Shown: piece after piece, positions 8,601 to 41,324 of the stretch
Numbering within the stretch: the first letter of the stretch is position 1
How the letters are laid out: each line of letters begins with the position of its first letter
Assembly: GCA_965112155.1 (NCBI GenBank)
Contig: OZ218113.1
Direction: 5' to 3' (one strand)
Origin: Podarcis liolepis
Lineage: Eukaryota
DNA: 64,000 nucleotides
Notes under the pieces: model-generated
Database searches by the model: none
The model's input: the letters and a program-made list of their open reading frames with translations, nothing else
What the model was told of the DNA's origin: nothing
Made by a program: the position numbers and the translations under genes

Positions 8601-11600
8601 GTCCCAAAACTCACTTGTTCCGGGAAATGCTGCTTTGCTTTCCCAAAACGCTGAGCACCTTGAGCTGAGTGTCTCTGGGCATGAGCAGAGTGCCTTTTGC
8701 CTCGAAGGGTTAGCATGTTCACAGATCCAGATTTCACTCCACGCAAAAGATCGCAGGGTTCCTCATGGTGAAGAAGGCAGTCTGCTATTACTGAAGCATT
8801 GGACCTGAGAACAGAGTGCCTCTGGTAATCTGCAGCGTGCCATCTCCAAAGGATGCCAGACCTGGTCTTGTGTTGTGGTAAAGAGACTAAGCTATGAATT
8901 AGCAAATCCATAAGAGAATAAGGAGAGCATAAGGCCACTGGTCCATCTAGTCCTATTCTCACAGTGGCCAACCAAAGGGAAGCCCCCAAGCAGGTTCTGG
9001 GCTGATAGGCTTATCCTCCCCTGTTTTGGCTCTCACTTCCACCCTGAATTCACTATGAGCCCGGTTTTTGAACCGGGAAGGGCAGGGTATAAATAAAAAG
9101 TTTATTATTATTTATTATTATGTGTTCCTTGGTGTTGGCAAGCCACTCCCTCAGCCTCTGTCTCACCAACTGCAATATTGGGGAGTAAAAAAAATAATAA
9201 TCTCCTTTTAAAAAAATGAATAACCCAAACAAGCATGCATAACGGTAGTGTGTTGCATTTCACTTGCAGCAGCTCAGTCACCTATTGACCTGCCTTATCC
9301 AGAAGTCAGACTCTTGCTCTGTTTAGCCCAGATCTTAGCCCTGCAGCCGGTGATCCTTTTGAACCTAAGGCCTTCTGTACACAAAGCAAGGGCTCAATGA
9401 TTAAACGGGGGTGGGGGGGGGCGGAGGAGTGTTCACAAGGATAGCCAGAGGAGCATTGGCCAAGTTCAGTTTGCTGCTGACAGTACCCATCTCTGTTGTG
9501 TGTGACAGCTGCGAAAAGAATGCCCCCTGGCCCAGCTGATGGACTGCGAGACAGACATGGTGAAGCAGATCCGATCCTTGGACAGTGACATGCAGACTCT
9601 GGTCTATGAAAATTACAACAAATTCATTTCGGCAACAGGTAACTGGAAGGCTTGGCGGGAGGGGGGGGGGCGCGGTGAGGTCCTGGAAAAGTTATATTTG
9701 TGGTTCACCTCCCTCTTCCAGTTTATTATTATTTAGATCAGGTGTGGGAAACCTGCAACCCACAGAACTTCCCCACCCAGCCCTCAGCTTCCTCCCCATC
9801 TCAGCCCCACCCTCTGCGCAGCCAATCAGCTTAAACAGACAGCTTCTGTTAGTGCCAATGGAAGAAAATGCTTTTGAAGCAGACTCTTCCTAACGTTCTC
9901 ACGTTCCATTCTTCAGACACAATCCGTAAGATGAAGAATGACTTCAAGAAGATGGAGGATGAGATGGACTGCTTGGCAGCAAACATGGCCGTCATCACAG
10001 AGTTCAGTGCAAGCATCAGCAGCACCTTGCAGGATCAACATGAGCAGATCACCAAACTATCCGGTGCGATACCACTTCTCTGATTGCTGCTAGTGTGCGA
10101 CAAGGGTGTCAGGAGCCCATTGGAGCTGATGCAAAGATGGCTGGGGAGGGCACCAGTTCAGTGGCAGAACATCCACTTTGCATGTCGGAGGCTACCTGTT
10201 TAATCCCTAGCATCTCCAGGAGGAGCTTGTTGAGTGCTGGAAGGTGGGGTGGCACCAGTTGGGGTTTGGGGCTGCAAAGCAGTTTGCCTGCCCTGCTCTG
10301 ACTTCCTCCCTCTCTCTTGACCCCAGGTGTTCATGCGCTCCTACGCAAGCTGCAGTTCCTGTTTGAGCTGCCGGCCCGCCTGACCAAATGTGTGGAGATG
10401 GAGGCCTACGGGCAGGCTGTGCGATACTACAGCAAGGCCCGCTCCATCCTCCACCAGTACCAACATATGCCTTCCTTCCGGGGCATCCAGGATGACTGCC
10501 AGAAGATCATGGCTGACCTCGCTCAGAAGCTGCGTGAGAAATTCAGGTAGGCAACAGAGGACATCAGGGGAGCTGTTGCACTTGACTGTTTGCTACAAAT
10601 GGGGCTGTGTTTGGGGAGGTCTTGGGGACTGAAGCAGTGGAGGCTGTGAGCCAGAAGACTTGGCAAAGAAGGGTGGCTGCTCTGTGATTCTGTGTGCATA
10701 TTTAGATTAGCTTAACTGATATGGTTTCCTTTCGAGGAATCCTGAGGTTGGAGAGGATTCCCCAGAGCCCTACAGTTCCCTGGGGGGAAGAGAATGGCTG
10801 CAGGGAGCCAATGTGGTGCCATAGTTGGAGTGCCTAATGAGGAGCTGGGGTTCAGGTACACCACCACCCTGCTCAATGCAGCCCTGAAGCATGCTGGGCA
10901 TACTGACCCCCCTCACTATCTCTCAGCCTAACCTGCCTTGTAGGATCGTTCTGCATTTATGAAATTTCTGGGGGGAAATCTTCTGTGTCGCCCAGGACTC
11001 TTGGGAGGAAGGGTGGAATGAAAATGTCACTTAAGAGGAGGAGCCAGTTTAAAATCTGCAGCTCAGCCCTCAGAGCCTTCCTTCCTGTCTCCTCAGGGAT
11101 GGGGGCTCTTGCGCCAAGGACTTAGCGGAGTGTGTGGAGCTGCTGCTGCAGCTGGGCGAGCCCGCCGAGGAGCTGTGCGACGAGTTCCTCTCTCATGCCT
11201 GCTGCCGCCTGGAAGCTGAGCTGCGAGCCCTGGAGGCGGAGCTGGGCGAGGGGCAGCTGGCCACCCCGGCCACCGACATCCTGGAGTTCACCGACCGTGG
11301 CTGCAACAACTTTGTCAGCAACATGTGCCTGGTGATTGCCTCATACCAAGAGCTGTTTGTCAGCCGGGAGGGGGCCCGTGAGATTGCCAGCATGGCCCAC
11401 GACAAGCTGGTGGCCTTTGTGGACGGCCTGATGGAGCGCTACTTTGCCCTGGTGGAGAGGCGCATCCAGCTGGAGCGGGGCGTGGGCGATAACTCCCTGC
11501 TGGTGCGGGCCCTGGACCGCTTCCACCGCCGCTTGCAGGCTTTGGTCAAGCTCTTGCCCGCCTCGCGGTCAGCGGCGGAGGGCACAGAAATCGTGGTGCG

Positions 11601-14600
11601 GGCAGCCAAGGAGCGCATCCGCCAGTACCTACAGGCCCTGCAGAGCTTCTACCTGGACTGCTTGACAGACGTGCGCCAGTCCTTGGCCGCCCCTCGGCTC
11701 ATGGGGAAGGACAGCCCCAACCTGGCAGAGCTGCTGGGCACCATCTCAGCCTCCATCCTCAACCAGATCAAGTCTGTGCTCACCTACGTCCACCTCTTCA
11801 CTGCCAAGGACATCACTTTCTCTAACAAGCCTTATTTCAAGGTAAGGGTAGAGAGAAAGAGGTTTTGTTAGACTTTTCAGAGAGAAAGTTGCTTGCTGGA
11901 GCCTGGAGACTTGATACATCACAAGAAATAAAAATGTGCATATGTAGAATTGCATAAGGTAACCCATGGCGACACAAATTGTATGAGAGCCAAACCCTCT
12001 GTAGGCTTCACGACAAGAACCTTCCACTGCCACCAGAAACCACATAAGAAACTCCTCCTTGGGTCCTGCTTTTGTAGGATGGACCTCTCTGATTGTGGGA
12101 GAAGCACCCCAGGATATCTCCCTTCCAGGGGTTAAGGCAGAGCTGGGTGTATTCAGCCTCTTTATTTTACATTTTGGGATATGCAGCTGCCAGCCTGAAG
12201 CCTCTGCCTGCTTCACGTTGGGGCCCCATAGCTGCTAGTCCTCATGAATCCCTTCTCATTATGCCCCTCAGCCACTTGCATCTCTGAAAGATCCCTGCAT
12301 TGCTGGGAGTTGGACTAATGACCTTTGGGGTCCCTTCCAGCCATACAATTCTATGAAATGTCTGAAATGAGGTAAGGGCTCCTTAACCCTTCTTCCCCAA
12401 TGTGAACAGCTGTAGTGGCTACCTGACAGTTCAGCGGCTGGTGGCCCCGTACTTGAACTGCCCCACATAGCTCCAGTCCTGCTATGTGATTTCTCTCTTA
12501 AGAAAAGCAAAGGCTCAAAGCTTTCTCACCGCCTATGAGCAATGGACTTTGCCAACATCCTCCACTTCAGGCATCCCTCCCGTTTGTCAGTGTCTTGGCT
12601 GACCCAGTGAGTCGTTGAGGGACCCGAGGGCTGAACTCAGGCAGAGCCTCCGTCCCTGTTCTTGCCAGAAAAGGAAGGGTTAAAGAGCCCCTTGGTTCCA
12701 CCAACTCCCTGCAGTGCTGGCCCTGGAATCAAACTGTGGCTCATGTCAAGGCTGGGTGGCTGAGACTTTTTGCTGCAATGCCTCTAACTTTCCCCTGTGC
12801 CTCTCCTTGCTTTTTCCTAGGGGGAATTCTGCAGCCAGGGTGTCCGCGAAGGCCTCATTGTCAGCTTCATCAAGTCCATCTGCCAGACAGCCCGGCAGTT
12901 CTGTGAGAGCACGGGCGACAAGGGGGGCTCCACGCCCCCCACCCTGCTGCTACTCCTCTCCCGCCTCTGCCTGGACTACGAGACCTCCACCATCAGCTAC
13001 ATCCTCACCTTGACAGATGAACAGTTTCTGGTGCAGGTGTGTCACACGTGGGAAGAGAGGATGCTGGGAGTCATTTCAGGCTTGGGAGACTTAAATGGCC
13101 AGGGTGGGGGGCAGAAGGGGGCTGTGTTTCCTTTCCTCTGCTCAGAACCGAGTTCACTGAGATCTGAATAAGGCCTCAGCTGTGCCATTATTCCACACAA
13201 CTATGAAACAAACATAGGGCTTTGTTCCCTCTTTATATATACAAAGAAGCACATTTTAGACCTGCCAGTTTTCTTTTAGAAGCCAACTACCAAACAAGAA
13301 GGGGGGGGGAAGCATTACGCAAGCTCCGTAAACAGGTCTTTTAAAAAAACATTTATAACATAATATATAACGAAATAGCAGAAGCCAGAACTGTACATAC
13401 TGTCCCATTTGCATCATCTGTGTGTGTGTGTAGCAAAGCTCACTGGTTTCCTTATTGCAGAATAAAGATTGCAGTATGTGTGACTCATGGAACTTTCTCA
13501 GCCAGGGGGCAGCCCCAAAGGAGAAATCCTGGCTAGCTTGCTTCTGGCTTTTGGAAGGGTCCTTCCCTGTTGAGTATGTTGCTTGGTGTATTCAGGTGTG
13601 GGGTGGAGGTGGGGTTCCCCCCCCCCCATATCACAGGGCCAGAGTCTCTTTCAAGGGAATTAATCCTATGCAGAGTAAATACTATTTATTAGAAATGCAT
13701 TAGAATTGGATTTTGTCACTTTGGAAGAAGCTTGAAATGTAAGTATTGTGACCCCTGCATTCCACATGCGTTGGGTTGGCTGAGAATGAAATGTGTAAAC
13801 TCCATTTCTGGCACTGGTCCTCAGTGCCGCTTCTTTGATGACTGTGTCAATTAGCTTTCCAGTCACTCCTCAGTCTTTCGGTCACTGCATAGGGCGCACC
13901 TGCTGCTTCCCCACCACCCCAGGAAACCCCTACATTTCTTGCCTCCCATAAAACATATACCGTATTTCATTTCTCCAGATGCGGTTCAGAAAGATGTAAA
14001 TCTCAAACCATTCAGAAACCAGCAAAGCCTATCCAAATATAGCCTGTTTAGTATTGGTATGGTGTAGCAGTTAACAGCGCGAGCTTTGAGCCAGGAAGTC
14101 CCTGGTTCAAATCCTGCCTCTGCTGGGAGCCTGTTGGATGACATTGGGCAAGCCAGTCCCTCTCAGCCTTTCCCACCCTCCACCTCCAGTTTTGTTCTTA
14201 GCGGACTGGCCTGCCTTGTGGCGAGGCCTCTTTACGTATCTAAAAGCTTTGAGTTTTCCAGAGCCCCACATTAAGCTACCAAGTGTGCCACCCTTTTCAT
14301 CCTCCTCCTGCTCTGCCTTGTCTCTGGACCAGGACCACTCTCCCGTCACCCCTGTCACTGGCTTGTGTGCTGAAGCTCGGGAAGCCGCCCAGAAGCTGCT
14401 GAACCACTATGTGAAGGTGCAAGGCCTGGTCATCTCTCAGATGCTGCGCAAAAGCGTCGAGACGCGGGATTGGATCACCACCATTGAACCACGCAATGTC
14501 CGTGCCGTCATGAAGCGTGTGGTGGAGGATGCCACCTCCATTGATGTTCAAGTGAGTGGAGGGGGGGGGAGGGATTTCAGAAAACCACCCGGTTCCAGCT

Positions 14601-17441
14601 TCTTACCTTGCCTGTAAATGGAAAGAGAGGGCACCATATGAGGAAGAGGGGGTTGGAATTTGGGGGTTTGTTCCATTTTATCTATTTGTTTATTTATAAT
14701 GATACCTTGAAAATATCAGTTTCCAATGTATACGGAAAGCCCATTAAAATTTTAAATCGGCTAATCGCCAGGGAAAAATGTATACTTAACAGGTTACGTA
14801 GGTTTGGCAGAATAGAAAAGTTCTCAGCAAGCGTTGGCACAGAAGGCATCGGCTGAATCTCTAGTGGTGGAGCGTTCCACAGGACTGGGCCAATGACACC
14901 GAAGGCTCTTTTTTTTGTTGATGTCAAATGAGCCTCACCAACTCAGGGAACGACCAGCCATGCTCCTGTGGATGTTCTCAGTGATCGAGCTGAAATAGAA
15001 GAGCTTTGTCGGTCCCTGAGGCACCCTGGACCGAAGTTGTTCAGGGCTCTGTAAATTAATACAAATAGTAAGTGGGCAGCCAGTGCAGCTGTTTTGACAG
15101 TGGTGTCATATGCTGCTTGTTCCAGGGTAAGCGTGGGGTGCCAAGGGTCCTCACTTGAAAGAGAGTGAACCTGTGCAGAGGCTCCCTCTCCATTCGAGTA
15201 ACTGCCTCACACGTTAATCTCCCCACGCAGGTTGGGCTTCTCTATGAGGAAGGTGTGCGCAAAGCCCAGAGCAGTGACTCCAGCAAAAGAACTTTCTCCG
15301 TCTACAGCAGCTCCCGGCAGCAGAGCCGCTACGCGCCAAGTTACACGCCCAGGTGAGCTGGGGAGGCAGGACAGGGAGTTTAAATCATCCCTAAGTCTTA
15401 AAGGAGCAGGCGGGGCACTGTGTGTATGTAATGCAACCTTGCAAATTGGCCCCTAAGAGTTTCGCATGGTTATTGTGTGCCACATCAAAGACCAAAAGAA
15501 CACCAAAGTGGATCTATCAGCTTCCCAGCTTGGGCTGCAGTCCTAATACCTGTTGATGACGTGGCCCAGCCAGCGCTGCAAACCCATCCCTGCTGCTTGC
15601 ACTGGCCAGGATGAAGCAGGGTGGGATGGAGGAAAGACTGGCCCTCCTCCCTTGTCTGTGCCAAGGCTGGTGCCACGAAGAGGCCCATATCAGGCTCGCA
15701 GCTGTCCCCTGATGGCAGTAGGGATGGCCCAGGATCCAGCAGACTCAGATTCACCCAACTTGCAGAAGGGTTCCTGCTGGCTCCTGTCCACTGGGTGGGT
15801 ATGTTGGTGTGATGCTTCCCTTCTGATGGCAGAGCTCTCTCCCCACAGCTGAGGCTGGTGGAACTCTGCAGGCCTGGGCAGAAGGAAAGAGATGTCCATC
15901 CAAACCTCTCTCCAGCAAGGCAGCTCAGGGGCTGGGGGATAGTGTGCTAGTCTCCTGGGCATGGCCCTTAGCCCCGCAAGCAGTCAGCCACTCTGTGTGA
16001 GCCTCATCTCTTCTCTTCTCTCCCCAAGCGCTCCCATGGATACCAACCTGCTGAGCAATATCCAGAAGCTTTTCTCTGAGCGCATCGACATCTTCAGCCC
16101 TGCGGAGTTCAACAAGGTGAGGAGCCTGCAGTGGTGTGCTCTGTTGTGCTTCCTCCAGCCAAAGCACATGAGGTTGGTGGCCTCTCTACAGGGGTGCCTG
16201 GATCTGCCTCTTGGGGAGATGTGCATGCACCCCACAGGGAGAGAGGAGCCATTGCCCTTGCCAACAGATGATGGGAGTGATCTCTAGAAAGGGTAGCAGG
16301 TTCCTTTTCTTGAGTTATTGCTAGATATATATGTATATATCTTTCACTAGGGCTGCAGTTGCAGCCTGAACCTCATTTGATTACACCACTCAGATCAGGA
16401 GAGAACCGTAATTTTCAGAATATGTAGGGGAGGCGTCCGTTTGGGTTCTCCCTCTCAGTGTTAAAGGCTAATAGTTCATGGAGCTCCAATCTGCTTCTCC
16501 CCTCCCAAAATGCCTGATTCTCAGCAGAGCCCAGAATCAGAGCTTGTGGTCATCTTGGCACCTTTGCTGAATGAATCACCCGCCCTCTTTCAGTTTCTGA
16601 GCACCGTTTGGCTGCCACCAGGACAGAGGTGAATCAAGCCTTTATTAAGAAGCTTGTGATGAACATCCATGATGAAGGTCCTTAGTAAGACCTGGCCAGG
16701 ATGGATGGTTAAGCTTGGCTGGTAAGAGCAGCCACATAAGTGCCTTTACTGTTGGGTCTTAGGCGTCCCCCTCTCTATTAGTTTTTTCTGTTTGTAATCA
16801 TCAAAATTGACACAGCAATGTGTGATTGGGGCAGGAGGGCGAAGCCACAGGCAGCGGCATTTGCCTGTTTTGTTGTCACTCCTAGGCCAGGTAGGTTGCA
16901 GAACATTACCAATAAAGCAAGTGCAATTTAAATGAAAATCATAGAATAAAAAACACAAAATGGCCATGCAAGAGGAAGGGAGGCACCCATTGACTTAACC
17001 AGAGGCCTGGCTGAAGAGAGGCAGAGTGAGCAGTTGTCCGAAACCATACAATGATTTCAGTGAGTACCTCCGAGGGAAAGTATCAGGAAAACATCCATTT
17101 GGGGGGCGGGGTGGGCAGATTTTTGGATCTTCACTCAGCTGTCCATTTTTTCATCCTCTTCATCCTCTTCTTACACTCAGGTCTCTGTGCTTACCGGCAT
17201 CATCAAGATCAGCCTGAAGACGTTCCTGGAGTGTGTCCGCCTGCGAACTTTTGGCCGCTTTGGCCTGCAGCAGATCCAGGTGGACTGTTACTACCTGCAA
17301 CTCTATCTGTGGCGCTTTGTCTCTGATGAGAACCTGGTGCACTTCCTGCTGGATGAGATTGTGGGCAGCACAGCCCACCGCTGCCTTGACCCCGTGCCCA
17401 TGGAGCAGAGTGTCATTGAGGTCATCTGTGAGCGCGGCTAG
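8288..17441 (+). CDS. VPS51: VPS51 subunit of GARP/EARP, 779 aa; exons 8288-8479, 9509-9638, 9917-10063, 10327-10546, 11097-11841, 12821-13036, 14333-14551, 15231-15352, 16029-16116, 17181-17441
   Basis: Recognisable motifs [63 protein letters not shown] and IEVICERG*. Ten GT-AG exons sum to 2340 nt in frame. AATAAA at 17571-17576. Confidence 0.97.
14830..15120 (-). mobile_element. L2-type LINE 3' fragment in VPS51 intron 7
   Basis: The minus-strand peptide [19 protein letters not shown] resembles the L2 RT C-terminus (RAFSvxgPxLWNxLP). Boundaries are approximate. Confidence 0.6.
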
Positions 17442-19559: not shown

Positions 19560-19860
19560 GCCTGAAATTTCCACTTTCACCCAATGATACAAAGTGCAGG
19601 AAGCCTGCCTGTAGTTTTTCTTGGGTAGACTTGGTTTTAGCAATCTTTAAGGATCTGTGCACCTAGGAAATGTTGTGCATGAGCTAGCATGGCGGCGGGC
19701 GGCGGCGGGGGGTGGGAACAGTAATATCTGCTGAAGGGCCCTCAGGGAATTTCCCCAGTATTTCCCCATTATGCATCTTTCCAAATCACATTTGAGTCAA
19801 CACAGGCTGTTGACGTGGGGCCCAGAAAGGGAACTGCTCGGGTGGTGTTTATATGGGGCA
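19560..19860 (+). promoter_or_regulatory. Candidate inducible promoter of the soluble TLR5-like gene
   Basis: NF-kB consensus GGGAATTTCC 19745-19754, kB-like TGAAATTTCC 19563-19572, AP-1 TGAGTCA 19793-19799, CRE-like TGACGT 19811-19816 and TATA-like TTTATAT 19848-19854, about 85 nt before the ATG at 19938. Confidence 0.65.
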
Positions 19861-19937
19861 AGGACTGTGCCAACCCATAAGCAGCAGCAGCAGAGAGAGA
19901 GAGAGAGAGAGTCCCATTTTGCACCAGCTTCAACACC

Positions 19938-22900
19938 ATGCCGAGGTTTCACCAAAGTCGCCCACTTTGGAGGGCTCCAAAAGGTGAGTGACAGAAGATA
20001 AAGTGGGGTTTGAGTCCCTCAATATGACCGGTCCTCTTTCTAGAAATTCAATAATTCTCCCCTGCCAGGTGAGTCATCAACCTTCAGGTTAGTGAAGAGC
20101 TTTAAGATGGTGAAGGCCCATTACTCCGTGGCATAGGTTGGATGCAAATGTTTTTTTCACACTGGTCCTGAAAGACCTACATTGGCTCCCAGTACATTTC
20201 CGAGCACAATTCGAAGTGTTGGTGCTGACCTTTAAAGCCCTAAACTGCTTCGGCCCAGTATACCTGAAGAAGCGTCTCCATCCCCATTGTTCAGCCCAGA
20301 CACTGAGGTCCAGCTTGGAGGGTTTTCTGGTGGCCTTCTGGCAAGAAGTGAAGTTAGAGGGAACCAGACAGAGGGCCTTTTCAGTGGTGGTGCCCACCCT
20401 GTGGAAAGCCCTCCCATCAGATGTCAAGGAAATAAACAACTATCTGATTTTTATAAGACATCTGAAGGCCACCCTATATAAGGACTTTTTTAAGGTGGCT
20501 TCCATCATATATAAAAATATAATAAAACCTTAAACCTTAAAAAAGTCCTTATACCCAGTCAGATGGGTGGGGTACAATTATTATTATTATTATTGCTGTT
20601 GTTGTTATTGTTATTGTTACTACTCACAAGGCCAACAACTTGAACTGCAGACATCAGCAGATGGCCATGACTTATCTCTTTACTGTGTGGGAGGAGGGAA
20701 GCTTTATTGCAGTTTTCTGCACATCAAGAGGGTGTTAAAAGGTGGTTAAAAGATGGTCTGTCCTTTTGCTGGTCAGTCTGCAACTCTATTGCTAGATCCC
20801 GTGCTTTGCGTGCCCAAGATTCTTCAGTTTGGGATATTGTGTAGCCAGTTTGGTGCAGTGGCTGTTGGGCTAGTGTCTGTGAGTCCAGGGTTCAAATCCC
20901 CACTCAGCCATGGAGCTCATTTGGTGATCTTGGGCCACTTGGGGTGTTGCAGGGAAGAAATGAGAAAGGGGAGAACCATGATTGCTGCCTTGAGCTCCTT
21001 AAGAGGAAAGGCAGAATATACCCGAAATTATAAAATCCTCACATTTCCAGTTAAAGGGTTCTTGGACAAGCAATGCTGGGAGCGGCCTCAGCACAGGAAC
21101 ACCCTGAAGAGCTCTTCCTGCTGCCCATCAAATGAGACAATATTGGACCAGTTTGTGTGTTTGTTACAGAGGTGGCATTTAAACCTGGGACTATCAGCAG
21201 CCAAATTATGCCATCTCTCTGATCAGTCAACTGTCAAAGCTTCTTCTTGCCCCATTAAACTTGAGGAAAGTTAGTTTTACAGGACAAGCTGTGCTAGGAA
21301 AATGAACAGGGAACTAACAAATGTCCCCTTTCTCCTCTCTTAATTGCCAGCTCCTTTTAGTAGGATCATCTTCTTGCTGGTTTTGGGGTACACTGTTGAC
21401 AGCCATCCCCGCTGCTACCATACCCAAGTGAATTCTCTGCTGGTGGCCAATTGCCAAGCTCAAGGACACAAGGAAGTCCCTGAAATGGACAGCTCCCTTC
21501 AGGTCCTCTTGCTGAACTTCAACTTCTTATCCACCATCTCGGATTCCTCCTTCTCCCAAATGCCGTCCCTGAGGATGCTGTCTCTTGGGAAGCAACTGGG
21601 AGGATCCCTCTATGTCGGAGAAAGGGCGTTTCAGAATGTGCCCAGTGTCAGGATCTTGGATCTTGGCGGCAACAAGAACTTGACCTTGCACCCAGCTGCT
21701 TTCCATGGCCTCACCCAGCTTGAGGTGTTGCTCTTGGATTTCAATGGTTTTGACGAAAAAGTACTGGAAAGAGGTTATTTCCAGGATTTGGTATCGCTGA
21801 AGAGGCTGGATCTTTCCGGAAACCGCATCCATAGGCTGAGGCCTGATCCAACTTTCCAGGGCCTGAGGAAGCTGAGCGTCCTTCAGCTGAAGCTCAACCA
21901 AATTGGGGAGATCTGTGGGGAAGACCTACAGCACCTCAGGGGGCACCATTTGGCCTTGCTTGACCTCTCATCCAACCGACTGCTTAATCCCAATGCCTGC
22001 ACCAACCCTTTCTTCAGCATCGTGCTGGGAACTCTGGACGTCTCTTCGAACTCATGGAACGCGATGGAAGCTCAGAAGTTCTTCACACGACTAAATGGCA
22101 CTCGAATCCATAACCTCAAGATGCAGCACTCAGCCGCCCTCGGCAGCGGGTTTGGTTTCCGTAACCTCAAGGGCATCTCGCCTAGCACCTTTCTTGGCCT
22201 CCGTGGCAGCAGAGTTTACTCCTTCGACATGTCCAATGGCTTCCTCAGAGAATTGGGCCCATCTGTCTTCTCGGGGCTCCCAGACCTTAACATCCTGCTG
22301 TTGAGATCCAACCAGATTACTGAGATCAATGATGGGGCCTTTTCTGGGCTGAGCCAATTGCGTATTCTCGACCTGTCCCACAATCTGCTTGGGGAGCTGT
22401 ACACAGAAGCCCTGCGACCCCTGAGGTCATCCCCACTCCAGCACCTCATCCTGAAGTCCAACCACCTTGGGATTGTTCAACACGATGCTCTGGTGGGGCT
22501 GAACTCCTTGCAAACCCTTGACCTCCGGGACAATGCTCTGGTGAGAGTCCCGGTAGGGAAACTCCCATCCCTTCTGCGCCTGATGCTGGGGCAAAACAGG
22601 ATTGGGGATGCCTGGGGTCTTGAACGTCTTAGCAGCAACCTGACCCACCTTGACTTCTCCTCCAACCGCCTGAGTGACTTAGGGAGTCTCTGGGGTCAGC
22701 TAGGGAAAACCCCCACCTTGCGTTTCCTGAATCTCTCAGGCAATCAGCTGGCAAAGTGCTTCAGGGCTGAGAGAGGCCCCAGGCAGCTCAGAGAACTAGA
22801 TATTTCCCATAACGACCTGGGAAACATCTGGAAAACAGAGAACTGTGTGGACATCTTCCAGCATTTGGAGAACCTTAGAGTCCTGAATCTCAGCTCCAAT

Positions 22901-23278
22901 GGCCTTCGGGTCCTTCCTGAGGGACTTTTCCAGGGTCTGGTGTCTCTCCAGACTCTGAATCTCTCTGACAACCTCCTGCCCATCATTCCTGAGGAGGCAT
23001 TCCTCAGCTTGAAATCCTTGCGCAGCCTTAGCCTCCATGGGAACCCCATAGTGACCCTCTCCCACTCTACATTTCAGCCACTGGTGCAGCTGCAGTCATT
23101 GGACCTGAGCGAGTTGTCCTTGCTGTGCGACTGTGGGCTTTCTGACTTCCAGAGTCTGATGCAGGACAAAGACTCAAGGCTGAGTGGAGCTGTGGCCAAT
23201 CTCCTGTGCATTCAGACCAGCCCTGATTTCCTGCATCTCTCCTTGTCCTGGTTCCTCCAGAGCAAGTGTGCCCAATAA
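19938..23278 (+). CDS. Soluble (ectodomain-only) Toll-like receptor 5-like protein, 657 aa; exon 1 19938-19983, exon 2 21351-23278
   Basis: TLR5 signature LRRs: LLLNFNFL, AFQNVPSVRILDLG, LHPAAFHGL, GSGFGFRNLK, LDLSHNLLGELY and LQTLDLRDNAL. It has LRRNT cysteines and a complete 4-Cys LRRCT followed by a stop, with no TM or TIR. Exon 1 (ACCATG...AAAG/GTGAGT, phase 1) joins in frame to the acceptor CAG at 21348-21350. Exon 1 is less certain than exon 2. Confidence 0.88.
20160..20610 (+). mobile_element. L2-type LINE 3' end in the TLR5-like intron
   Basis: Encodes LKDLHWLPVHFRAQFEVLVLTFKALN..TLRSS..RAFSVVVPTLWKALP, followed by an (ATT)n-rich tail. Confidence 0.8.
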
Positions 23279-23548
23279 CATGTTACGATCCAATATGGGG
23301 TTTGGGATGAAGAACAAAATCTTATCTTATCCGGGATGCCATCAAGCTGCACAGCAGTGGCAAAACCTGTGTTTCAGTTATCAAAAAAATGCCTCATTGT
23401 TGTCATTTTCGCATGTGTGGGAACATCCATTTGGTAGGCCCATAATCTCTGTGTATTCAAGTAGCAAAGGCCAAATTGCTGACGTTTCGTAACTCACACC
23501 CCAAAGCTGGCTTTTTTTGCTTCTGGCATGTGTAAGCAAAACAATCCA

Positions 23549-23598
23549 AACACACACACACACACACACACACAGATAGAGAGAGAGAGAGACAGAGA
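23549..23598. repeat. (CA)n/(GA)n microsatellite
   Basis: Seen directly. Similar tracts lie at 24290-24314 (TG)n and 46747-46783 (CT)n(CA)n. Confidence 0.9.
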
Positions 23599-26039
23599 GG
23601 CAAATGCTGTGTGATTGCAGACCCTCCAAATGTCCCGATTTTCCAGGGACAGTCCTGGAAGTGAGTCTACTCCCTGCTGTCAAAACTGCCCATTCCAATT
23701 CCCTCTCCCTTTGGTTCCTAAGCCCTAAACGACTTAGGTCCAAAGTATGTGAGAGACATCCTTTCCTAGAGATCCTCTTGGTAGTTCCTCCACCATCAGT
23801 AGTTTGAGGTGTGTTGTGTGTGATGATTTAAATGCATTTTGTATCTTTAAACATGGTTTTAGTAAGTTGATAACCCTAAGAAGCAGAAGCTTTAGAGCCA
23901 ACTTGTGGATTTGACAACCTAGCAAGTTAAGTAACCTACTATTTATTTATTTATTTATTTTATTTACCAGTACCTATTAAATTTATATACCGCCCTTCCT
24001 CTGAGGATCACAGGGTGGCTTAAGTATAAAAACACAAAAATACATAACATAGTTTGAACAAGGTTTTTTTTTTAAAGACGTGTATACATTTAATGAAATA
24101 AATAACGTTTGTTAGAGATACTTATGCTGATGATGTATTCATACATAAATGCTTTTAAAACATCTCTCCTTTCATTATCAGTAAAACTGTGTCCTTAATC
24201 CAGTTAGATTGATCATTAGTTTTGCTAAGTAATTCAGCCTTGAAAGCAGTCCAAGGTGACCTGGCAACCTGAACAGAACAGTTAACATATGTGTGTGTGT
24301 GTGTGTGTGTGTGTTTGCGAGTGATCAGGTTTTGCTTACAGAGGACTAAGAAGCGAAGAAGCAGGGTTGGCCCTAACTTTGAACCTACGCAAATGGAAGT
24401 TCCAGCGCATGTGAAAAGGACAAATATTGAGACAATCATGGATTATTTGGGCAAAGGGAAAATGCCTGCTTCCGCAGCCCAGCACTGTTTTCTACATCCT
24501 GTGGGGTGGGATTTCCTTTGCCATGTGTCTATGGAGGCAGTTCTGTTTCGGTGCCGACACCAGGAAAGCAATTTGGGGCAGAGAAGACCGAGTGGGAGAA
24601 GCCAACTGGGGAAAATATTACAATGTGAAGAAAGGATTGTAATTTAGAAAAGACTTAAACAGCAGAATTCTGAAGAGTCAACACATATCTGCAGGCCTCA
24701 CTTTCCCCCTATTTTTGGTTGTTACAGAACCCTTACTCGGATTCCTTGGTGTGTGTACTCCTGAGTGTGTATGAATTTAGGGTTTGTATTAGGTAGGGTA
24801 ATAGCTTCATTCCAGCTTCTCTCTCCCTTTTTCCCAGAGTCAATCTCCACAAGGGAGAAAACACCTCACTGTTTAAATATTTTGCTAGGTAATAAAGTCT
24901 TGAACTTTCATTTTTGGTCTGGATTTCCCTCCTATACATTCCCTTGCAAAGGAACCCCCCCCCCCCCAGATTGAGGTTTAGTTGTTCATCTTTGTCTCTT
25001 TGCATTCCCTTTGCAAAGCAAAGGTTCTTGTGTGTCTCAGGCCTGATCAATTTGACACGCACAGCACCCTCTCACAAACTCGCTGTCCTGAGAATAATGG
25101 ACACATGGTCTATGTGGGTCTTCCATAAAGAACTCCTAATATTTCTTCCTGCAGCTACTTTGAATGGAGATTGCCTTGCGATGGCACACTGCTTTGGGCT
25201 TGATCGCAGAAGCTTGGTACCCACGGATATGGTCTATAGCCCTATCCGAAAAATCGACTTGCCAGATCTGAGCAGCCAAAGGGAAAACAAACCCACACCT
25301 TTTCTATAACACACGGCATTCACACACCATTTGAATGGCAATGCGCATCAAATGGGGGAGGGGCGGCCCCCTCAATTATTATTATTTTTGGGGAGGGGGG
25401 GTCGAAGGGACCTCGGTTACAAGGAGTTGGTGCCTATGAGGCCAGAGAAGGAGATAATACCATGGTTATGCTGCAGCGCCCCCAGGTGGACAAACAGCCA
25501 CAGCCACCATCACATCATTGTGGATGAGCTGGTTTTGCAGAAAGCTGAGATGCCAGACTCCAAGCAGCGCCTTAATTAAAAGGCCACTTACAACAGAAGA
25601 GCCTAGTCATGCACACTGCCTCGCGTAAAAAAGGTGGGATATAAATAAATAAAATTCCTGTGGCTTAACGGAGACTTGAAGGCAGTATATTTTTCATTTC
25701 AGAAACAACAGGCGAGATTTAAAAGCCATCTCGACGCGTCCTGGTGTTTATTTCCGTTTTGGTCCGTCCCCACCCCCCACCCCCAGTTGTTCATTTCTCC
25801 ACTGAACTCCAATGCATTAGAGCAGGAGGCGTTTTGCACTCTGCGTATGCCCAGGCACTCTCTTTTCCTTCTCATTAGCGCATTCTTCCACCACCAAGGG
25901 AACCCAGGACGGCGAAAGCGAAGGATTGGGACACCACCGTCCACCCACCACTCCCTCTTCTGTCCTCTCCCTTTTTACCACCGCGATTTCATTCCTTTCC
26001 TGCGGGCGTCTGGATGCACGAACAGGGCTGGACGGGATG

Positions 26040-29067: not shown

Positions 29068-32000
29068 ATGGATCGACTGAAGGTCCCCCGTACCAGAGAG
29101 CTGGAATTTGGCGGCGTCCTAGGTGAGGGGGAAAGGCTGAGCTCAGAGGTGTGTGTGTTTGCAGGCAGAAGAATACTGTTATAGATGGGGTGCAGGGGCT
29201 AAACCTTAGAAATGAGTAAATGGTAGGATTTTTATTATTTGGGGATGAGATACAGGCTGCGGAGGAATTCCTGAGCTATCCTATGCCAAATGACCTGGCC
29301 AAGCTTTGGGCCGTTAAGAAACAATACAGGGTCATTGAGGGCCATTGTCAATGCAAGATAACTGTCCTTCTCTCCGCCCCCCCCCTTGCCCTGAGGTGTG
29401 AACAGAGACTGGGAGTTCGGAAGGTTGCAAGGATAACTTGGTGTTGTATGACAAGAAAAGATAATTTTTAGCAAGGTGTGCTGGGATGAAGAAGGGGAGA
29501 GAAGAAAGACTGGGATCCATCTTGGGCAGGCTGGCTGAAGGCTGGCTGGGAGAGATGCCTTGGACTAAAGGGCTGCCCTGCTGTGGGGGACAAACCCCTC
29601 TTGAGATGACCATGCTTTAAGATCTGGACTCCCTCCATGCTGACTGAAGGTGTAAATAGATGAATAAACCATATTTCTTAAAGCTACAACAGTCTCCAAA
29701 GGGAGCCTGGGTGATGCCTGGAATCCCATGGACTCTGGCTACCGCTCGGCAGAGAGAGGGGGAGGCACTCAACTTTTGTAACAATACCTTTCTCTCATCC
29801 CTCCCCAGGAATCCTCTATTAGGGAGGCTTGGGAATGGTGTGAGCAGGGGATGCCGGACTCCTGGGTTCTGTCTCTTCCCCTTTCTGACTTCTCCATCTT
29901 TTTTCATCACAGGGGCTGCCCTCCTTATCGTCCTGATGCCCACCACTGTCTTCTACCTCCTGTTGACTTGCAGAACGGAGCAGGCCAGCCTGTTGAACAT
30001 CCCCTATCCTTTGCCCACCCTCCGCTCCCTGTGGGACCCCCGGGACTTTGCCCTAGTCTTGGCCTGGGTTGGATTGCAAGCTTTCTTATATATGCTCCCG
30101 ATGGGGAAGGTAAGGAGACCTCCACACTCTCAAGGGTTTTTCCCTGGCTTCTGCCACGGACTCCTTCTTGCCTGCGCTGCAGTAAGGTTCTGCAGCCTGG
30201 CCTCAGTTTTCCTCATCTGAGCAATGGGGAGAAAGGCTAGCTGGTCCTATTAGTAAAATGGCAGAAATGGGGAAGTGACATCACAAAACAGCGGCTGCCC
30301 TTGGCGACAGAGGGACCCTTGAGTCGTGGGGAAAGGCCAAAGCAGCCCTCTGTCTTTTTATTTTCCCAAAGCACATTTTGAGCATTCCTCTCCCACCATA
30401 GAGGCTTCCTCCTGTCTCCATATAAAGCAGAGTTTCCCAAATGTGGGTCTCCAGCTGTTGTCAGACTACAACTCCCATCATCCCTAGCTGGCAGGACCAG
30501 TGGCCAGGGATGCTGGGAATTGTAGTCTGAACCGTTGGGAAACTGTGTACGTGCAGCTACTCACACAGAGTCAGTTAAGGTTTGGTAGGCAGCCAGAAGG
30601 CAATCTGAAGGAGTAAGTCTGCCTGGTGATAACAGAGACATGGGGAGAGCTCCCTGATTGGTCAAGCTCTTTGTAGGGAGTGATAATTAATGGTTTGCTA
30701 ACTGGAATGTGTTTGTTCAGTATTCAGAGCTCAGTGTTCAGAGCTCTGTGTGTCAGTGTAGGAGTTGTGAGTTGTGTAAGAGAGAGCTAGCAAAAGATCT
30801 GTGTTCTGATCCTGTAAATAGTCCACTGCATATAATAAACACCTAACTACAAGTTCCTGGTTCCTGCTTCGTCTATCCTGTTTGCAGCCAAGTTGCCAAT
30901 TGCTTCTGGATTCTGTATGTACTCTGCTAGGTCTGGCTAAGGTCCTGCAACTAGTCAGAAAGATAGGTAAAGGACCCCTGACCATTGGTCCAGTCGTGGC
31001 CGACTCTGGGGTTGCGGCGCTCATCTCGCTTTATTGGCCGAGGGAGCTGGTGTACAGCTTCCGGGTCATGTGGCCAGCATGACTAAGCCACTTCTGGCTA
31101 ACCAGAGCAGTGCACGGAAACACCGTTTACCTTCCCGCCGGAGCGGTACCTATTTATCTACTTGCACTTGGACGTGCTTTCGAACTGCTAGGTTGGCAGG
31201 AGCAGGGACCGGCAACGAACCGCCAACCTTCTGATCGGCAAGTCCTAGGCTCTGTGGTTTAACCCACAGCGCCACTCGCGTCCCAAGTCAGAAAGTTGCG
31301 AAATACCAAATAGGTTTTGCCAAAATTAACAACAGCTGGAGACCCAAGTTTGGGAAACCCTGATATAAAGAAAGCACCCCGCTTTCAGGCAGCCCTGGCA
31401 ACATAGACCCCACCACAGCTGACTGCGTCTGTGTGTGTTTTCAACAGCTCACAGAAGGGACCCCCCTGCGAGACAAGACCCGGCTCCAGTACCGGATTAA
31501 TGGTAAGTGCCCCCCACCCTTAGGAAAGGTCCCCCAGAGGTGAGAGAGCCGCCGGGGTGCTGCTGGTGGCTCTCAGCAATGGGGAGGGGTGTGGTGGTGA
31601 GTGGCTTTTCAGCGTATCCCAGTGTTTCAAGACTGAGAACATTTTATTAAACGCCACCTTGGGATTCTCCCCAAGCTTAGCCATATTGGTATCTGCTTAG
31701 GAAGGCTGGGGGGGGGGGGGGAGGAGGCAGGAGGGATGATAAATTGATGTCTGGTCGTTGTTTGTTTGCCCCACCCTCTTTCTCCCCCTGCCCCACATTT
31801 CTCAGGGTGCCATGCCATGGTGGTCACAGCGCTGGTGGTTGGAGCCGGCCTGGCGGCTGGACTGCGCCTCAGTTACATCCACGACCATTTCCTGCAGTTG
31901 GCCTTCTCTGCCTCCCTTGTGGCCTTTGGACTCAGCGCCCTCCTGTACCTCAAGGCCTTGCTTGCCCCAGAGGCAGCCCTGGCCCCAGGCGGGAACTCAG

Positions 32001-41126: not shown

Positions 41127-41324
41127 NNNNNNNNNNNNNNNNNNNNNNNNNNNNNNNNNNNNNNNNNNNNNNNNNNNNNNNNNNNNNNNNNNNNNNNNNN
41201 NNNNNNNNNNNNNNNNNNNNNNNNNNNNNNNNNNNNNNNNNNNNNNNNNNNNNNNNNNNNNNNNNNNNNNNNNNNNNNNNNNNNNNNNNNNNNNNNNNNN
41301 NNNNNNNNNNNNNNNNNNNNNNNN
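41127..41324. other. Assembly gap (198 N)
   Basis: Run of N bases. Confidence 1.

What the first reader, a model, noticed from the sequence alone, without database searches (positions are those of the whole stretch)
19938..23278. Intact secreted TLR5-like flagellin-sensor gene between VPS51 and TM7SF2 in a lizard
Seen: a 1.9-kb uninterrupted exon colinear with the TLR5 ectodomain, including the LRR9 loop GSGFGFRNLK (22142-22171). It ends two residues after the fourth Cys of a complete LRRCT cap (CDC..C..C-AQ*). I found no TM helix or TIR-coding sequence before the TM7SF2 promoter. Known: membrane TLR5 senses flagellin, soluble TLR5S is best characterised in teleosts as an inducible amplifier of flagellin signalling, and in human VPS51 directly neighbours TM7SF2. 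Inference: this is a dedicated secreted flagellin-binding protein (co-receptor, opsonin or decoy) in a reptile and absent from the human locus. The clean stop after the cap argues for a real soluble protein rather than decay. Similar TLR5-like models may already be auto-annotated in other reptiles or amphibians, so the novelty is more likely functional than in sequence.
Basis: partly seen in the sequence, partly recalled or inferred. Interest (0 to 1): 0.88.

Follow-up and report, generated by a model that had tools for sequence, protein, structure and literature searches.

The report
Lizard TLR5L, a known soluble TLR5 paralogue
This is an intact, transcribed lizard gene for a secreted, signalling-domain-less relative of the flagellin receptor TLR5, but it is the already described gene TLR5L of amphibians and reptiles, whose ligand has still not been tested.

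Summary
A two-exon gene (ATG 19938; GT..AG intron 19984-21350; exon 2 from 21351; stop 23276-23278) encodes a 657-residue TLR5-type ectodomain. It has a signal peptide and a full LRRCT cap, and it ends two residues after the last cap cysteine. No TM or TIR coding sequence exists anywhere in the 64-kb window. Transcript contigs of a closely related lizard carry the spliced junction and run through the stop into contiguous 3'UTR. VPS51 lies upstream and a TM7SF2-type reductase downstream.

The gene is not new. It is 95% identical to the annotated Lacerta agilis model and belongs to TLR5L, described by Babik 2014 and Liu 2020, which report it in amphibians, turtles and the anole.

My trees add two points. 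Teleost TLR5S is an independent invention (AU p 6e-38). The TLR5L clade also holds lungfish, bichir, sturgeon and paddlefish proteins, so it predates tetrapods.

Constraint is ordinary for a TLR ectodomain (pN/pS about 0.3). Flagellin binding remains an inference, from the conserved LRR9 loop and a fold match to the zebrafish TLR5-flagellin complex. No other note of this scan mentions TLR5.

The parts
19848..19854 (+). TATA-like box (TTATATG within TTTATATGG), about 30 nt upstream of the inferred 5' end of the transcript; a CRE-like TGACGTGG sits at 19811-19818
   Evidence: Read from the sequence. The transcript contig has 98 nt before the splice junction, which would put its 5' end near 19886 if colinear. 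Function is inferred, not tested.
19921..19983 (+). Exon 1 (5'UTR plus ATG at 19938 and 46 coding bases: MPRFHQSRPLWRAPK plus the first base of the next codon). It may begin near 19886.
   Evidence: ATG and GTGAGT donor. Matches residues 1-15 of Lacerta agilis P0001. 61 letters upstream of the junction lie in the transcript contigs of runs X1 and X2.
19984..21350 (+). Intron 1, 1367 nt, GT..AG, phase 1
   Evidence: The joint 19981>21349 (cut +2) skips 1367 nt, GT..AG, in contigs of two runs from two studies. Polypyrimidine tract and AG at 21349-21350.
20028..20519 (.). Dispersed repeat (SINE-like) inside intron 1
   Evidence: Very high, partly matching read and contig depth with many loose ends, unlike the rest of the intron.
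21351..23278 (+). Coding part of exon 2: rest of the signal peptide, LRRNT, about 22 LRRs, LRRCT, and stop TAA at 23276-23278
   Evidence: AlphaFold2 model with pLDDT 90.5.
21353..21403 (+). Hydrophobic core and c-region of the signal peptide (PFSRIIFLLVLGYTVDS)
   Evidence: Sequence reading. This is the only disordered, low-confidence segment of the model (residues 1-17, pLDDT below 50). It is conserved in orthologues. No dedicated signal-peptide predictor was available.
22142..22171 (+). LRR9 loop GSGFGFRNLK, the TLR5-subfamily signature
   Evidence: Conserved as GxxFGFxN(L/I)K in both TLR5L and membrane TLR5. Aligns to human TLR5 GAGFGFHNIK.
23126..23269 (+). LRRCT cysteine cluster (C592, C594, C619, C639 of the exon-2 product)
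   Evidence: Modelled with capping strands and helices.
23279..23861 (+). 3'UTR shown by a transcript contig. It possibly continues to about 24943 (AATAAA at 24891); other candidate signals are ATTAAA at 23976 and AATAAA at 24097.
   Evidence: The 2611-nt contig of run X2 runs from exon 1 through the stop to 23861. Separate contigs over 24326 to about 24943 have the same depth in both runs.
9539..17441 (+). Upstream neighbour: VPS51-like exons. The last exon ends ...VICERG*.
   Evidence: PF08700 with E 2e-8 at 9539-9733, and GARP/exocyst-type hits at 10317-10547. Exon-like ORFs. The name VPS51 rests partly on my own knowledge of the protein.
29888..37353 (+). Downstream neighbour: ERG4_ERG24 sterol reductase (TM7SF2-type) exons
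   Evidence: tblastn with the TM7SF2-type part of the fused Lerista model P0019 gives 63-97% identity. PF01222 with E 3e-20 and 2.5e-23.

Best explanation
The locus is the lacertid (wall-lizard-type) orthologue of TLR5L, an old paralogue of the flagellin receptor TLR5. It has two exons and encodes a 657-residue protein. The protein consists of a signal peptide and a complete TLR5-type leucine-rich-repeat horseshoe with both caps. It has no membrane anchor and no TIR signalling domain, so it is exported as a soluble glycoprotein (shown by anatomy, not by experiment).

The most likely mechanism is inferred. The protein binds bacterial flagellin on the same lateral face and LRR9 loop that membrane TLR5 uses. 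Because it cannot signal, it would act on the response of membrane TLR5, either by handing flagellin over (amplifier) or by sequestering it (decoy). Both roles have been reported for the independently evolved teleost TLR5S.

I put identity as TLR5L at about 0.95, a soluble secreted product at about 0.85, and flagellin as the ligand at about 0.6.
For: Identity:
- 95% identical to the 657-residue Lacerta agilis model, and 54-78% identical to about 650-residue TIR-less proteins of squamates and turtles. Some are named 'Toll-like receptor 5L'.
- The window protein sits inside a clade with support 100/99 that holds all TLR5L.

Gene model:
- Exon 1 matches the orthologue's residues 1-15.
- The GT..AG junction is present in transcript-sized contig sets of two studies.
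- One 2611-nt contig runs from exon 1 through the stop into the 3'UTR, with every indel lying after the stop.

Soluble product:
- No TIR or TM sequence anywhere in the window.
- Hydropathy maximum 1.13, against 2.8-3.2 for true TM helices.
- The stop lies 0-6 residues after the last LRRCT cysteine in nearly all clade members, from bichir to snakes.

Constraint:
- 16 synonymous and 15 non-synonymous differences against the relative, pN/pS about 0.30.
- Published reptile TLR5L dN/dS is 0.236.
- Divergence is similar to that of the membrane TLR5 ectodomain in the same species pairs.

Flagellin face:
- The LRR9 loop motif is conserved between paralogues.
- The model (pLDDT 90.5) superposes on the zebrafish TLR5 fragment bound to flagellin at 2.4 A, TM 0.85.

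Context from papers:
- Newt TLR05L is expressed far more in liver than in spleen.
- Frog TLR5L is upregulated after bacterial infection.
Against: - No binding, secretion or signalling experiment exists for any tetrapod TLR5L in the literature I could search. Liu 2020 states that its ligand is unknown, and Babik 2014 that flagellin binding is unknown.
- In sauropsid, caecilian and salamander TLR5L, the 'DPD' that follows the LRR9 loop lysine in membrane TLR5 is replaced. It reads GIS here, while frogs and basal fishes keep DPD or NPD. This could mean altered specificity.
- TLR5L is only 36-38% identical to membrane TLR5 of the same species.
- Two raw RNA-seq runs of the related species show almost no reads on the exon, so expression is tissue-restricted or low.
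- The runs that carry the spliced contigs are labelled RNA only by a guess.
- The signal peptide was judged by eye, not by a predictor.
Confidence: 0.85

Rival explanations
1. It is a soluble LRR protein of the TLR5 lineage that no longer recognises flagellin. It would bind another microbial or host ligand, or serve only as a partner of another receptor.
For: The paralogues have been separate for a very long time (stem branch 0.35-0.4) and share 36-38% identity within one species. The DPD motif next to the LRR9 loop is replaced in amniote TLR5L. The literature lists the ligand as unknown.
Against: The core LRR9 loop (GxxFGFxN-h-K...TF-GL) and the following LD-S-GF repeat are kept in both paralogues over hundreds of millions of years. 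The N-terminal 14 repeats model onto flagellin-bound TLR5 at 2.4 A. Independently evolved soluble TLR5 forms in teleosts are reported to bind flagellin (papers cited).
Confidence: 0.25
2. It is the ectodomain exon of a full membrane TLR, whose TM/TIR exon lies downstream or outside the window and is reached by splicing.
For: Exon 2 is the only large coding exon, and a downstream exon outside the assembled interval could in principle exist. There is a gap of N at 41127-41324.
Against: No TIR-like sequence exists in the 64 kb. The in-frame stop is read through into contiguous 3'UTR in the transcript contig, with no donor used. The next gene on the same strand, a TM7SF2-type reductase, starts 6.6 kb downstream. 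Dozens of independent orthologous models end at the same place.
Confidence: 0.02
3. It is a decaying, truncated duplicate of membrane TLR5, that is, a pseudogene fragment that happens to be open.
For: It lacks two of the three parts of a TLR.
Against: - 644 open codons.
- pN/pS about 0.3, and a published dN/dS of 0.236.
- Conserved length and stop position from bichir to snakes.
- Spliced transcripts.
- A high-confidence fold.
Confidence: 0.01
4. It is the tetrapod orthologue of teleost TLR5S.
For: Same domain layout and similar length. One frog paper draws TLR5S and TLR5L as sister groups.
Against: Teleost TLR5S nests inside teleost membrane TLR5 with support 100/100. Forcing TLR5L and TLR5S together costs 417 log-likelihood units, AU p 6e-38. 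Babik 2014 and Liu 2020 reached the same conclusion.
Confidence: 0.01

Closest known systems
TLR5L / TLR05L of amphibians and reptiles (Babik et al. 2014, PMC4316619; Liu et al. 2020, PMC6946030; frog TLR5L, PMC12179096)
   Same: It has the same domain layout: signal peptide, TLR5-type LRR ectodomain, and no TM or TIR. The length is about 650 residues, it falls in the same clade, and 95% identical models are already in NCBI and UniProt. This is the same gene.
   Different: Nothing essential. This is one more species. The literature calls TLR5L tetrapod-specific or amphibian-derived, whereas my trees place lungfish, bichir, sturgeon and paddlefish proteins in the same clade.
Teleost soluble TLR5S (trout, seabream, catfish)
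   Same: A secreted TLR5 ectodomain without TM or TIR. It is liver-biased and inducible, and is reported to bind flagellin and modulate membrane TLR5. It is the best functional analogue.
   Different: It is not orthologous, because it arose inside teleost membrane TLR5. Identity to TLR5L is only about 35-39%.
Membrane TLR5 (human 3j0a; zebrafish TLR5b-flagellin complex 3v47)
   Same: The ectodomain is colinear, the LRR9 loop signature is kept, and the fold of the first 14 repeats superposes at 2.4 A on the flagellin-bound fragment.
   Different: There is no TM helix and no TIR domain. Identity is 36-38% within one species, and the DPD after the loop is replaced by GIS. The genomic location differs, between VPS51 and TM7SF2.

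Membership tests
TLR5L (soluble TLR5 paralogue of amphibians and reptiles) | TLR5-subfamily LRR ectodomain with N- and C-terminal caps | tested here: met
   Best PDB match is human TLR5, E 6.7e-94, colinear. Only LRR Pfam families are found. The AF2 model has pLDDT 90.5, and its Foldseek hits include TLR5 and TLR3 ectodomains. The LRRCT has four cysteines.
TLR5L (soluble TLR5 paralogue of amphibians and reptiles) | No transmembrane helix and no TIR domain, with the stop right after LRRCT | tested here: met
   tblastn with TM+TIR queries gives no hit better than E 0.09 in 64 kb. Hydropathy maximum is 1.13. The transcript contig runs through the stop into the 3'UTR.
TLR5L (soluble TLR5 paralogue of amphibians and reptiles) | Groups with named TLR5L sequences and not with TLR5 or TLR5S in a phylogeny | tested here: met
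   Clade support is 100 (SH-aLRT, 64 rows) and 100/99 (careful tree, 32 rows). The nearest sequence is Lacerta agilis at 95%.
TLR5L (soluble TLR5 paralogue of amphibians and reptiles) | N-terminal secretion signal | tested here: inconclusive
   A positively charged n-region (exon 1) is followed by IIFLLVLGY and TVDS. Residues 1-17 are the only unstructured part of the model. No signal-peptide predictor was available, and the joined exon1-exon2 protein was not built.
TLR5L (soluble TLR5 paralogue of amphibians and reptiles) | Conserved position between VPS51 and TM7SF2 | tested here: inconclusive
   Met in this window. In other species the evidence is only indirect.
Teleost TLR5S | Descent from teleost membrane TLR5 (nests within the teleost TLR5 clade) | tested here: not met
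   The AU test rejects a joint clade, p 6e-38.
Teleost TLR5S | Binds flagellin and modulates TLR5M signalling | not testable with these tools
   The complex predictor did not fold the pair with Salmonella FliC. A bench assay is needed.
Membrane TLR5 | TM helix plus cytoplasmic TIR domain | tested here: not met
Membrane TLR5 | LRR9 loop and lateral flagellin-binding face | tested here: inconclusive
   The motif GSGFGFRNLK...TF.GL and the following FDMSNGF are conserved, but DPD is replaced by GIS. The fold matches 3v47 and 5gy2 at 2.4-2.5 A. Binding itself was not tested.

The most novel reading that the evidence does not exclude
TLR5L may be more than a tetrapod copy of the fish solution. It would be a separate soluble pattern-recognition protein that has existed at least since the common ancestor of bony vertebrates. 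With a lamprey root it may even date to before the shark and bony-fish split. It has been kept in ectothermic lineages and was lost in mammals, birds and crocodilians. In amniotes its remodelled LRR9-loop flank (DPD to GIS or DIS) may give it a ligand range or a partner different from membrane TLR5. The age is well supported here. The divergent function is only not excluded.
Probability: 0.25. Interest if true: 0.5.

Novelty: already known. Interest (0 to 1): 0.2.

Why it matters
As a gene this is ordinary. It is a correctly spotted orthologue of a named, annotated family, so it adds nothing to the catalogue.

The open question is the one the literature already states: no tetrapod TLR5L has been shown to bind flagellin or to change TLR5 signalling. 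A lizard, turtle or frog TLR5L tested next to its membrane TLR5 would settle whether vertebrates twice evolved the same soluble regulator of flagellin sensing. It could also help explain why mammals, birds and crocodilians lack the gene.

A small by-product here is that the clade includes lungfish, bichir, sturgeon and paddlefish proteins. That pushes the origin of TLR5L back beyond the amphibian or tetrapod origin proposed in the papers I read.

Tried and rejected
1. Complex prediction of residues 18-400 of the exon-2 product with Salmonella FliC 40-460 came back NOT FOLDED. The tool does not pair a eukaryote chain with a microbe chain. This is no evidence either way, and I tried no other route.

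I could fetch no orthologous DNA, so I ran no codon-model dN/dS of my own and made no direct synteny check in other species.

3. The AU test on the 64-row alignment with the mixture model did not finish in three calls. I repeated it on 32 rows with LG+G4.

4. Pfam on ten long upstream ORFs gave nothing. VPS51 was recognised only from short exon ORFs. PDB held no match for the 245-residue VPS51-like exon.

5. Raw RNA-seq runs X23 and X24 of the related species gave almost no reads on the gene, so I could infer no transcript ends or expression level.

6. Literature searches for a functional study of tetrapod TLR5L, or for reports of TLR5L in sturgeon, bichir or lungfish, found none. The Anolis TLR5 paper does not mention a soluble form.

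7. The platypus 634-residue and catshark 648-residue short 'TLR5' proteins looked like possible mammalian and shark TLR5L. Both cluster with their own lineage's membrane TLR5, so I rejected them as members.

8. The joined exon1-exon2 protein was never built or searched. The exons were handled apart by reference, and Lacerta agilis P0001 served as the full-length proxy.

9. The human locus was not examined.
Full report
**Observation.** The window holds an uninterrupted reading frame at 21344-23278 on the + strand (644 codons). Pfam sees only leucine-rich-repeat families in it (LRR_8, E 7.6e-70). The best match among solved structures is human TLR5 (3j0a, E 6.7e-94), aligned colinearly from residue 43 to 627 of the query and 18 to 592 of TLR5. 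The frame ends C-A-Q-TAA, two residues after the fourth cysteine of a C-x-C...C...C cap.

**Gene model.** The frame does not start with ATG. Just upstream of it lie a polypyrimidine tract and an AG at 21349-21350. The phase (one base carried over) fits the acceptor. This first exon translates to MPRFHQSRPLWRAPK and matches residues 1-15 of the 657-residue Lacerta agilis protein P0001 (MLKFHQSRPLWRAPK). The predicted product is also 657 residues long. I did not build or search the joined protein. The exons were handled apart by reference, and P0001 served as the full-length proxy.

**Transcripts.** Contig sets of two runs, from two studies of a species about 2% diverged from the window, carry the junction 19983|21351 (GT..AG, 1367 nt skipped). 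One 2611-nt contig runs from exon 1 through all of exon 2 and across the stop to 23861. All its indels against the window lie after 23326, in the 3'UTR. These runs are labelled RNA only by a guess. However, they total 38-74 million letters, and away from dispersed repeats they cover neither the intron nor the intergenic DNA, so they behave as transcriptomes. Further contigs over 24326 to about 24943 have the same depth as the coding contig in both runs, and they end just after an AATAAA at 24891. The 3'UTR may therefore be about 1.7 kb long. Two raw RNA-seq runs of the same relative show almost no reads on the gene (four reads in one run), so expression in those samples is low.

**No anchor, no signalling domain.** tblastn with three whole lizard membrane TLR5 proteins finds only the ectodomain. 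A sensitive search with the last 250 residues (TM plus TIR) of eight membrane TLR5 proteins finds nothing better than E 0.09 anywhere in the window, and only E above 6 between the stop and the next gene. The highest 19-residue hydropathy in the exon-2 product is 1.13. The TM helices of lizard TLR5 reach 2.8-3.2. There is no hydrophobic C-terminal tail that could signal a GPI anchor. The N-terminus has a basic stretch, then IIFLLVLGY, then TVDS. It is the only unstructured part of the AlphaFold2 model (residues 1-17). I read it as a signal peptide but had no predictor for it. There are six N-x-S/T sequons.

**Neighbours.** Upstream on the same strand are VPS51-like exons from 9539 to a stop at about 17441 (PF08700, E 2e-8). 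Downstream on the same strand are ERG4_ERG24 sterol-reductase exons at 29888-37353. The same neighbourhood in other tetrapods is supported only indirectly. I did not examine the human locus.

**Family.** The database search returns a long series of 617-694-residue TIR-less proteins:
- Lacerta agilis at 95% identity.
- The worm lizard Rhineura at 78%.
- Other squamates at 61-70%.
- Turtles at 54-58%.
- Caecilians, salamander and frogs at 44-51%.
- Lungfish, bichir, sturgeons and paddlefish at 44-46%.

Membrane TLR5 proteins with a TIR domain reach only 35-41%. A few entries carry the name 'Toll-like receptor 5L'.

In a 64-row tree of the ectodomain, the window groups with Lacerta, then Rhineura, then other squamates. 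All the short tetrapod proteins, together with those of lungfish, bichir, sturgeon and paddlefish, form one clade (SH-aLRT 100, stem 0.35). A careful 32-row tree gives 100/99 for this clade and 94/91 for jawed-vertebrate membrane TLR5. Teleost soluble TLR5S, including the seabream protein named as such, nests inside teleost membrane TLR5 (100/100). Holding TLR5L and TLR5S together costs 417 log-likelihood units (AU p 6e-38). That group was named after the tree was seen, and the model was LG+G4. The short catshark and platypus proteins fall with the membrane TLR5 of their own lineages, so they are not TLR5L. No bird, crocodilian or other mammal appears in the clade. Liu et al. list no TLR5L for the Chinese alligator.

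**Constraint.** The stop lies 0-6 residues after the last cap cysteine in nearly all clade members, from bichir to snakes. The truncated design is therefore ancestral, not decay. Of the 31 listed coding differences between the window and the relative's transcripts, 16 are synonymous and 15 are not. This gives pN/pS of about 0.30, from a partial list counted crudely. Liu et al. report dN/dS of 0.236 for nine reptile TLR5L sequences, with no positively selected sites. In the same species pairs, TLR5L is about as conserved as the ectodomain of membrane TLR5: 53-65% against 57-67%, and for the two turtles 85% against 79%.

**Structure and the flagellin face.** The AlphaFold2 model, built from an alignment of 32 sequences, has pLDDT 90.5 and pTM 0.87. 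Its first roughly 417 aligned positions superpose on the zebrafish TLR5 fragment bound to Salmonella flagellin (3v47) at 2.4 A (TM 0.85, 33% identity), and on the Bacillus flagellin complex (5gy2) at 2.5 A. The whole horseshoe resembles TLR3 ectodomains (TM about 0.7). The LRR9 loop motif G-x-x-F-G-F-x-N-(L/I)-K...T-F-x-G-L and the next repeat (L/F)-D-x-S-x-G-F are conserved in both paralogues across vertebrates. One difference stands out. The D-P-D that follows the lysine in membrane TLR5, in frog TLR5L and in the basal-fish proteins reads G-I-S here, and (D/G)-(I/L/V/F)-S in other sauropsids, caecilians and the axolotl. That this loop is the main contact for flagellin is from my memory of the 3v47 work, not from a test here.

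**Mechanism.** Shown:
- An intact, conserved, spliced gene.
- A product that has an export signal by reading.
- A full TLR5-type horseshoe.
- Nothing that could anchor it or let it signal.

Inferred:
- It is secreted.
- It binds flagellin on the conserved face.
- It thereby raises or damps signalling by membrane TLR5. Both effects have been reported for teleost TLR5S (papers cited).

Newt TLR05L is expressed much more in liver than in spleen, and frog TLR5L rises after bacterial infection. Both fit a humoral factor. The main rival is that the ligand has changed, and I give that about one chance in four.

**What is known.** Babik et al. 2014 named TLR05L in newts. They showed it is not orthologous to teleost TLR05S, noted it in turtles and the anole lizard, and wrote that it is unknown whether it binds flagellin. 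Liu et al. 2020 list TLR5, TLR5S and TLR5L as the three members of the TLR5 subfamily. They describe TLR5L as a soluble short form of amphibians and reptiles without TM and intracellular domain, state that its ligand is unknown, and propose independent origins in fish and amphibians. A 2025 frog paper predicts TLR5L to be extracellular and finds it inducible. I found no functional study of any tetrapod TLR5L.

The paralogue is thus at least as old as bony vertebrates, not 'unique to some tetrapods'. With a lamprey root it is sister to all jawed-vertebrate membrane TLR5, but that placement (94/91) depends on the root and may be affected by the long stem.

**Limits.**
- The complex predictor did not fold the lizard protein with flagellin, because it does not pair eukaryote and microbe chains. 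I took no other route.
- There was no signal-peptide predictor.
- The expression evidence comes from a related species and from assembled contigs.

**Other notes of the scan.** Another follow-up in this scan calls this genome a wall lizard (Podarcis). That fits the 95% identity to Lacerta agilis, but I did not test it.

**Verdict.** The gene is already known and interest is low.

Noticed in passing
window 19811-19886: A TATA-like TTTATATGG (19846-19854) and a CRE-like TGACGTGG (19811-19818) sit about 30-70 nt upstream of where the transcript contig would begin (about 19886). An (AG)10 microsatellite lies at 19892-19911 in the 5'UTR. This overlaps another first-reader note on an inducible promoter (s1-847123).
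   Followed up: partly
window 20028-20519: A dispersed SINE-like repeat inside intron 1 draws hundreds of partly matching RNA reads and many contigs from elsewhere in the genome. It carries spurious ORFs on both strands (20089-20533).
   Followed up: partly
window 24326-24943: Transcript contigs with the same depth as the TLR5L coding contig in two runs end just after an AATAAA at 24891. The 3'UTR may therefore be about 1.7 kb long, broken in assembly at (T)10 at 24064 and (TG)12 at 24290.
   Followed up: partly
proteins P0033 and P0019: Public annotation errors. The caecilian Rhinatrema TLR5L is named 'vacuolar protein sorting-associated protein 51 homolog isoform X4'. A Lerista skink model of 1028 residues fuses TLR5L to the neighbouring TM7SF2-type reductase.
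   Followed up: partly
proteins P0067, P0076, P0153: Other short, TIR-less 'TLR5' proteins (catshark 648 aa, platypus 634 aa, mudminnow Umbra 654 aa) each cluster with the membrane TLR5 of their own lineage. They are either further independent soluble forms or truncated gene models.
   Followed up: partly
proteins P0056, P0059, P0060, P0063: Lungfish, bichir, sturgeon and paddlefish have TIR-less proteins of about 640-660 residues inside the TLR5L clade. No teleost, gar, bowfin or coelacanth member turned up in the two searches, which suggests loss in some ray-finned lineages.
   Followed up: partly
window 9539-17441: VPS51-like exons on the + strand. The N-terminal Vps51 domain starts at 9539, so the first exon or exons may lie further upstream in the window.
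   Followed up: partly
window 41127-41324: A run of N (assembly gap or masked stretch) downstream of the TM7SF2-type gene. I left it untouched.
   Followed up: no
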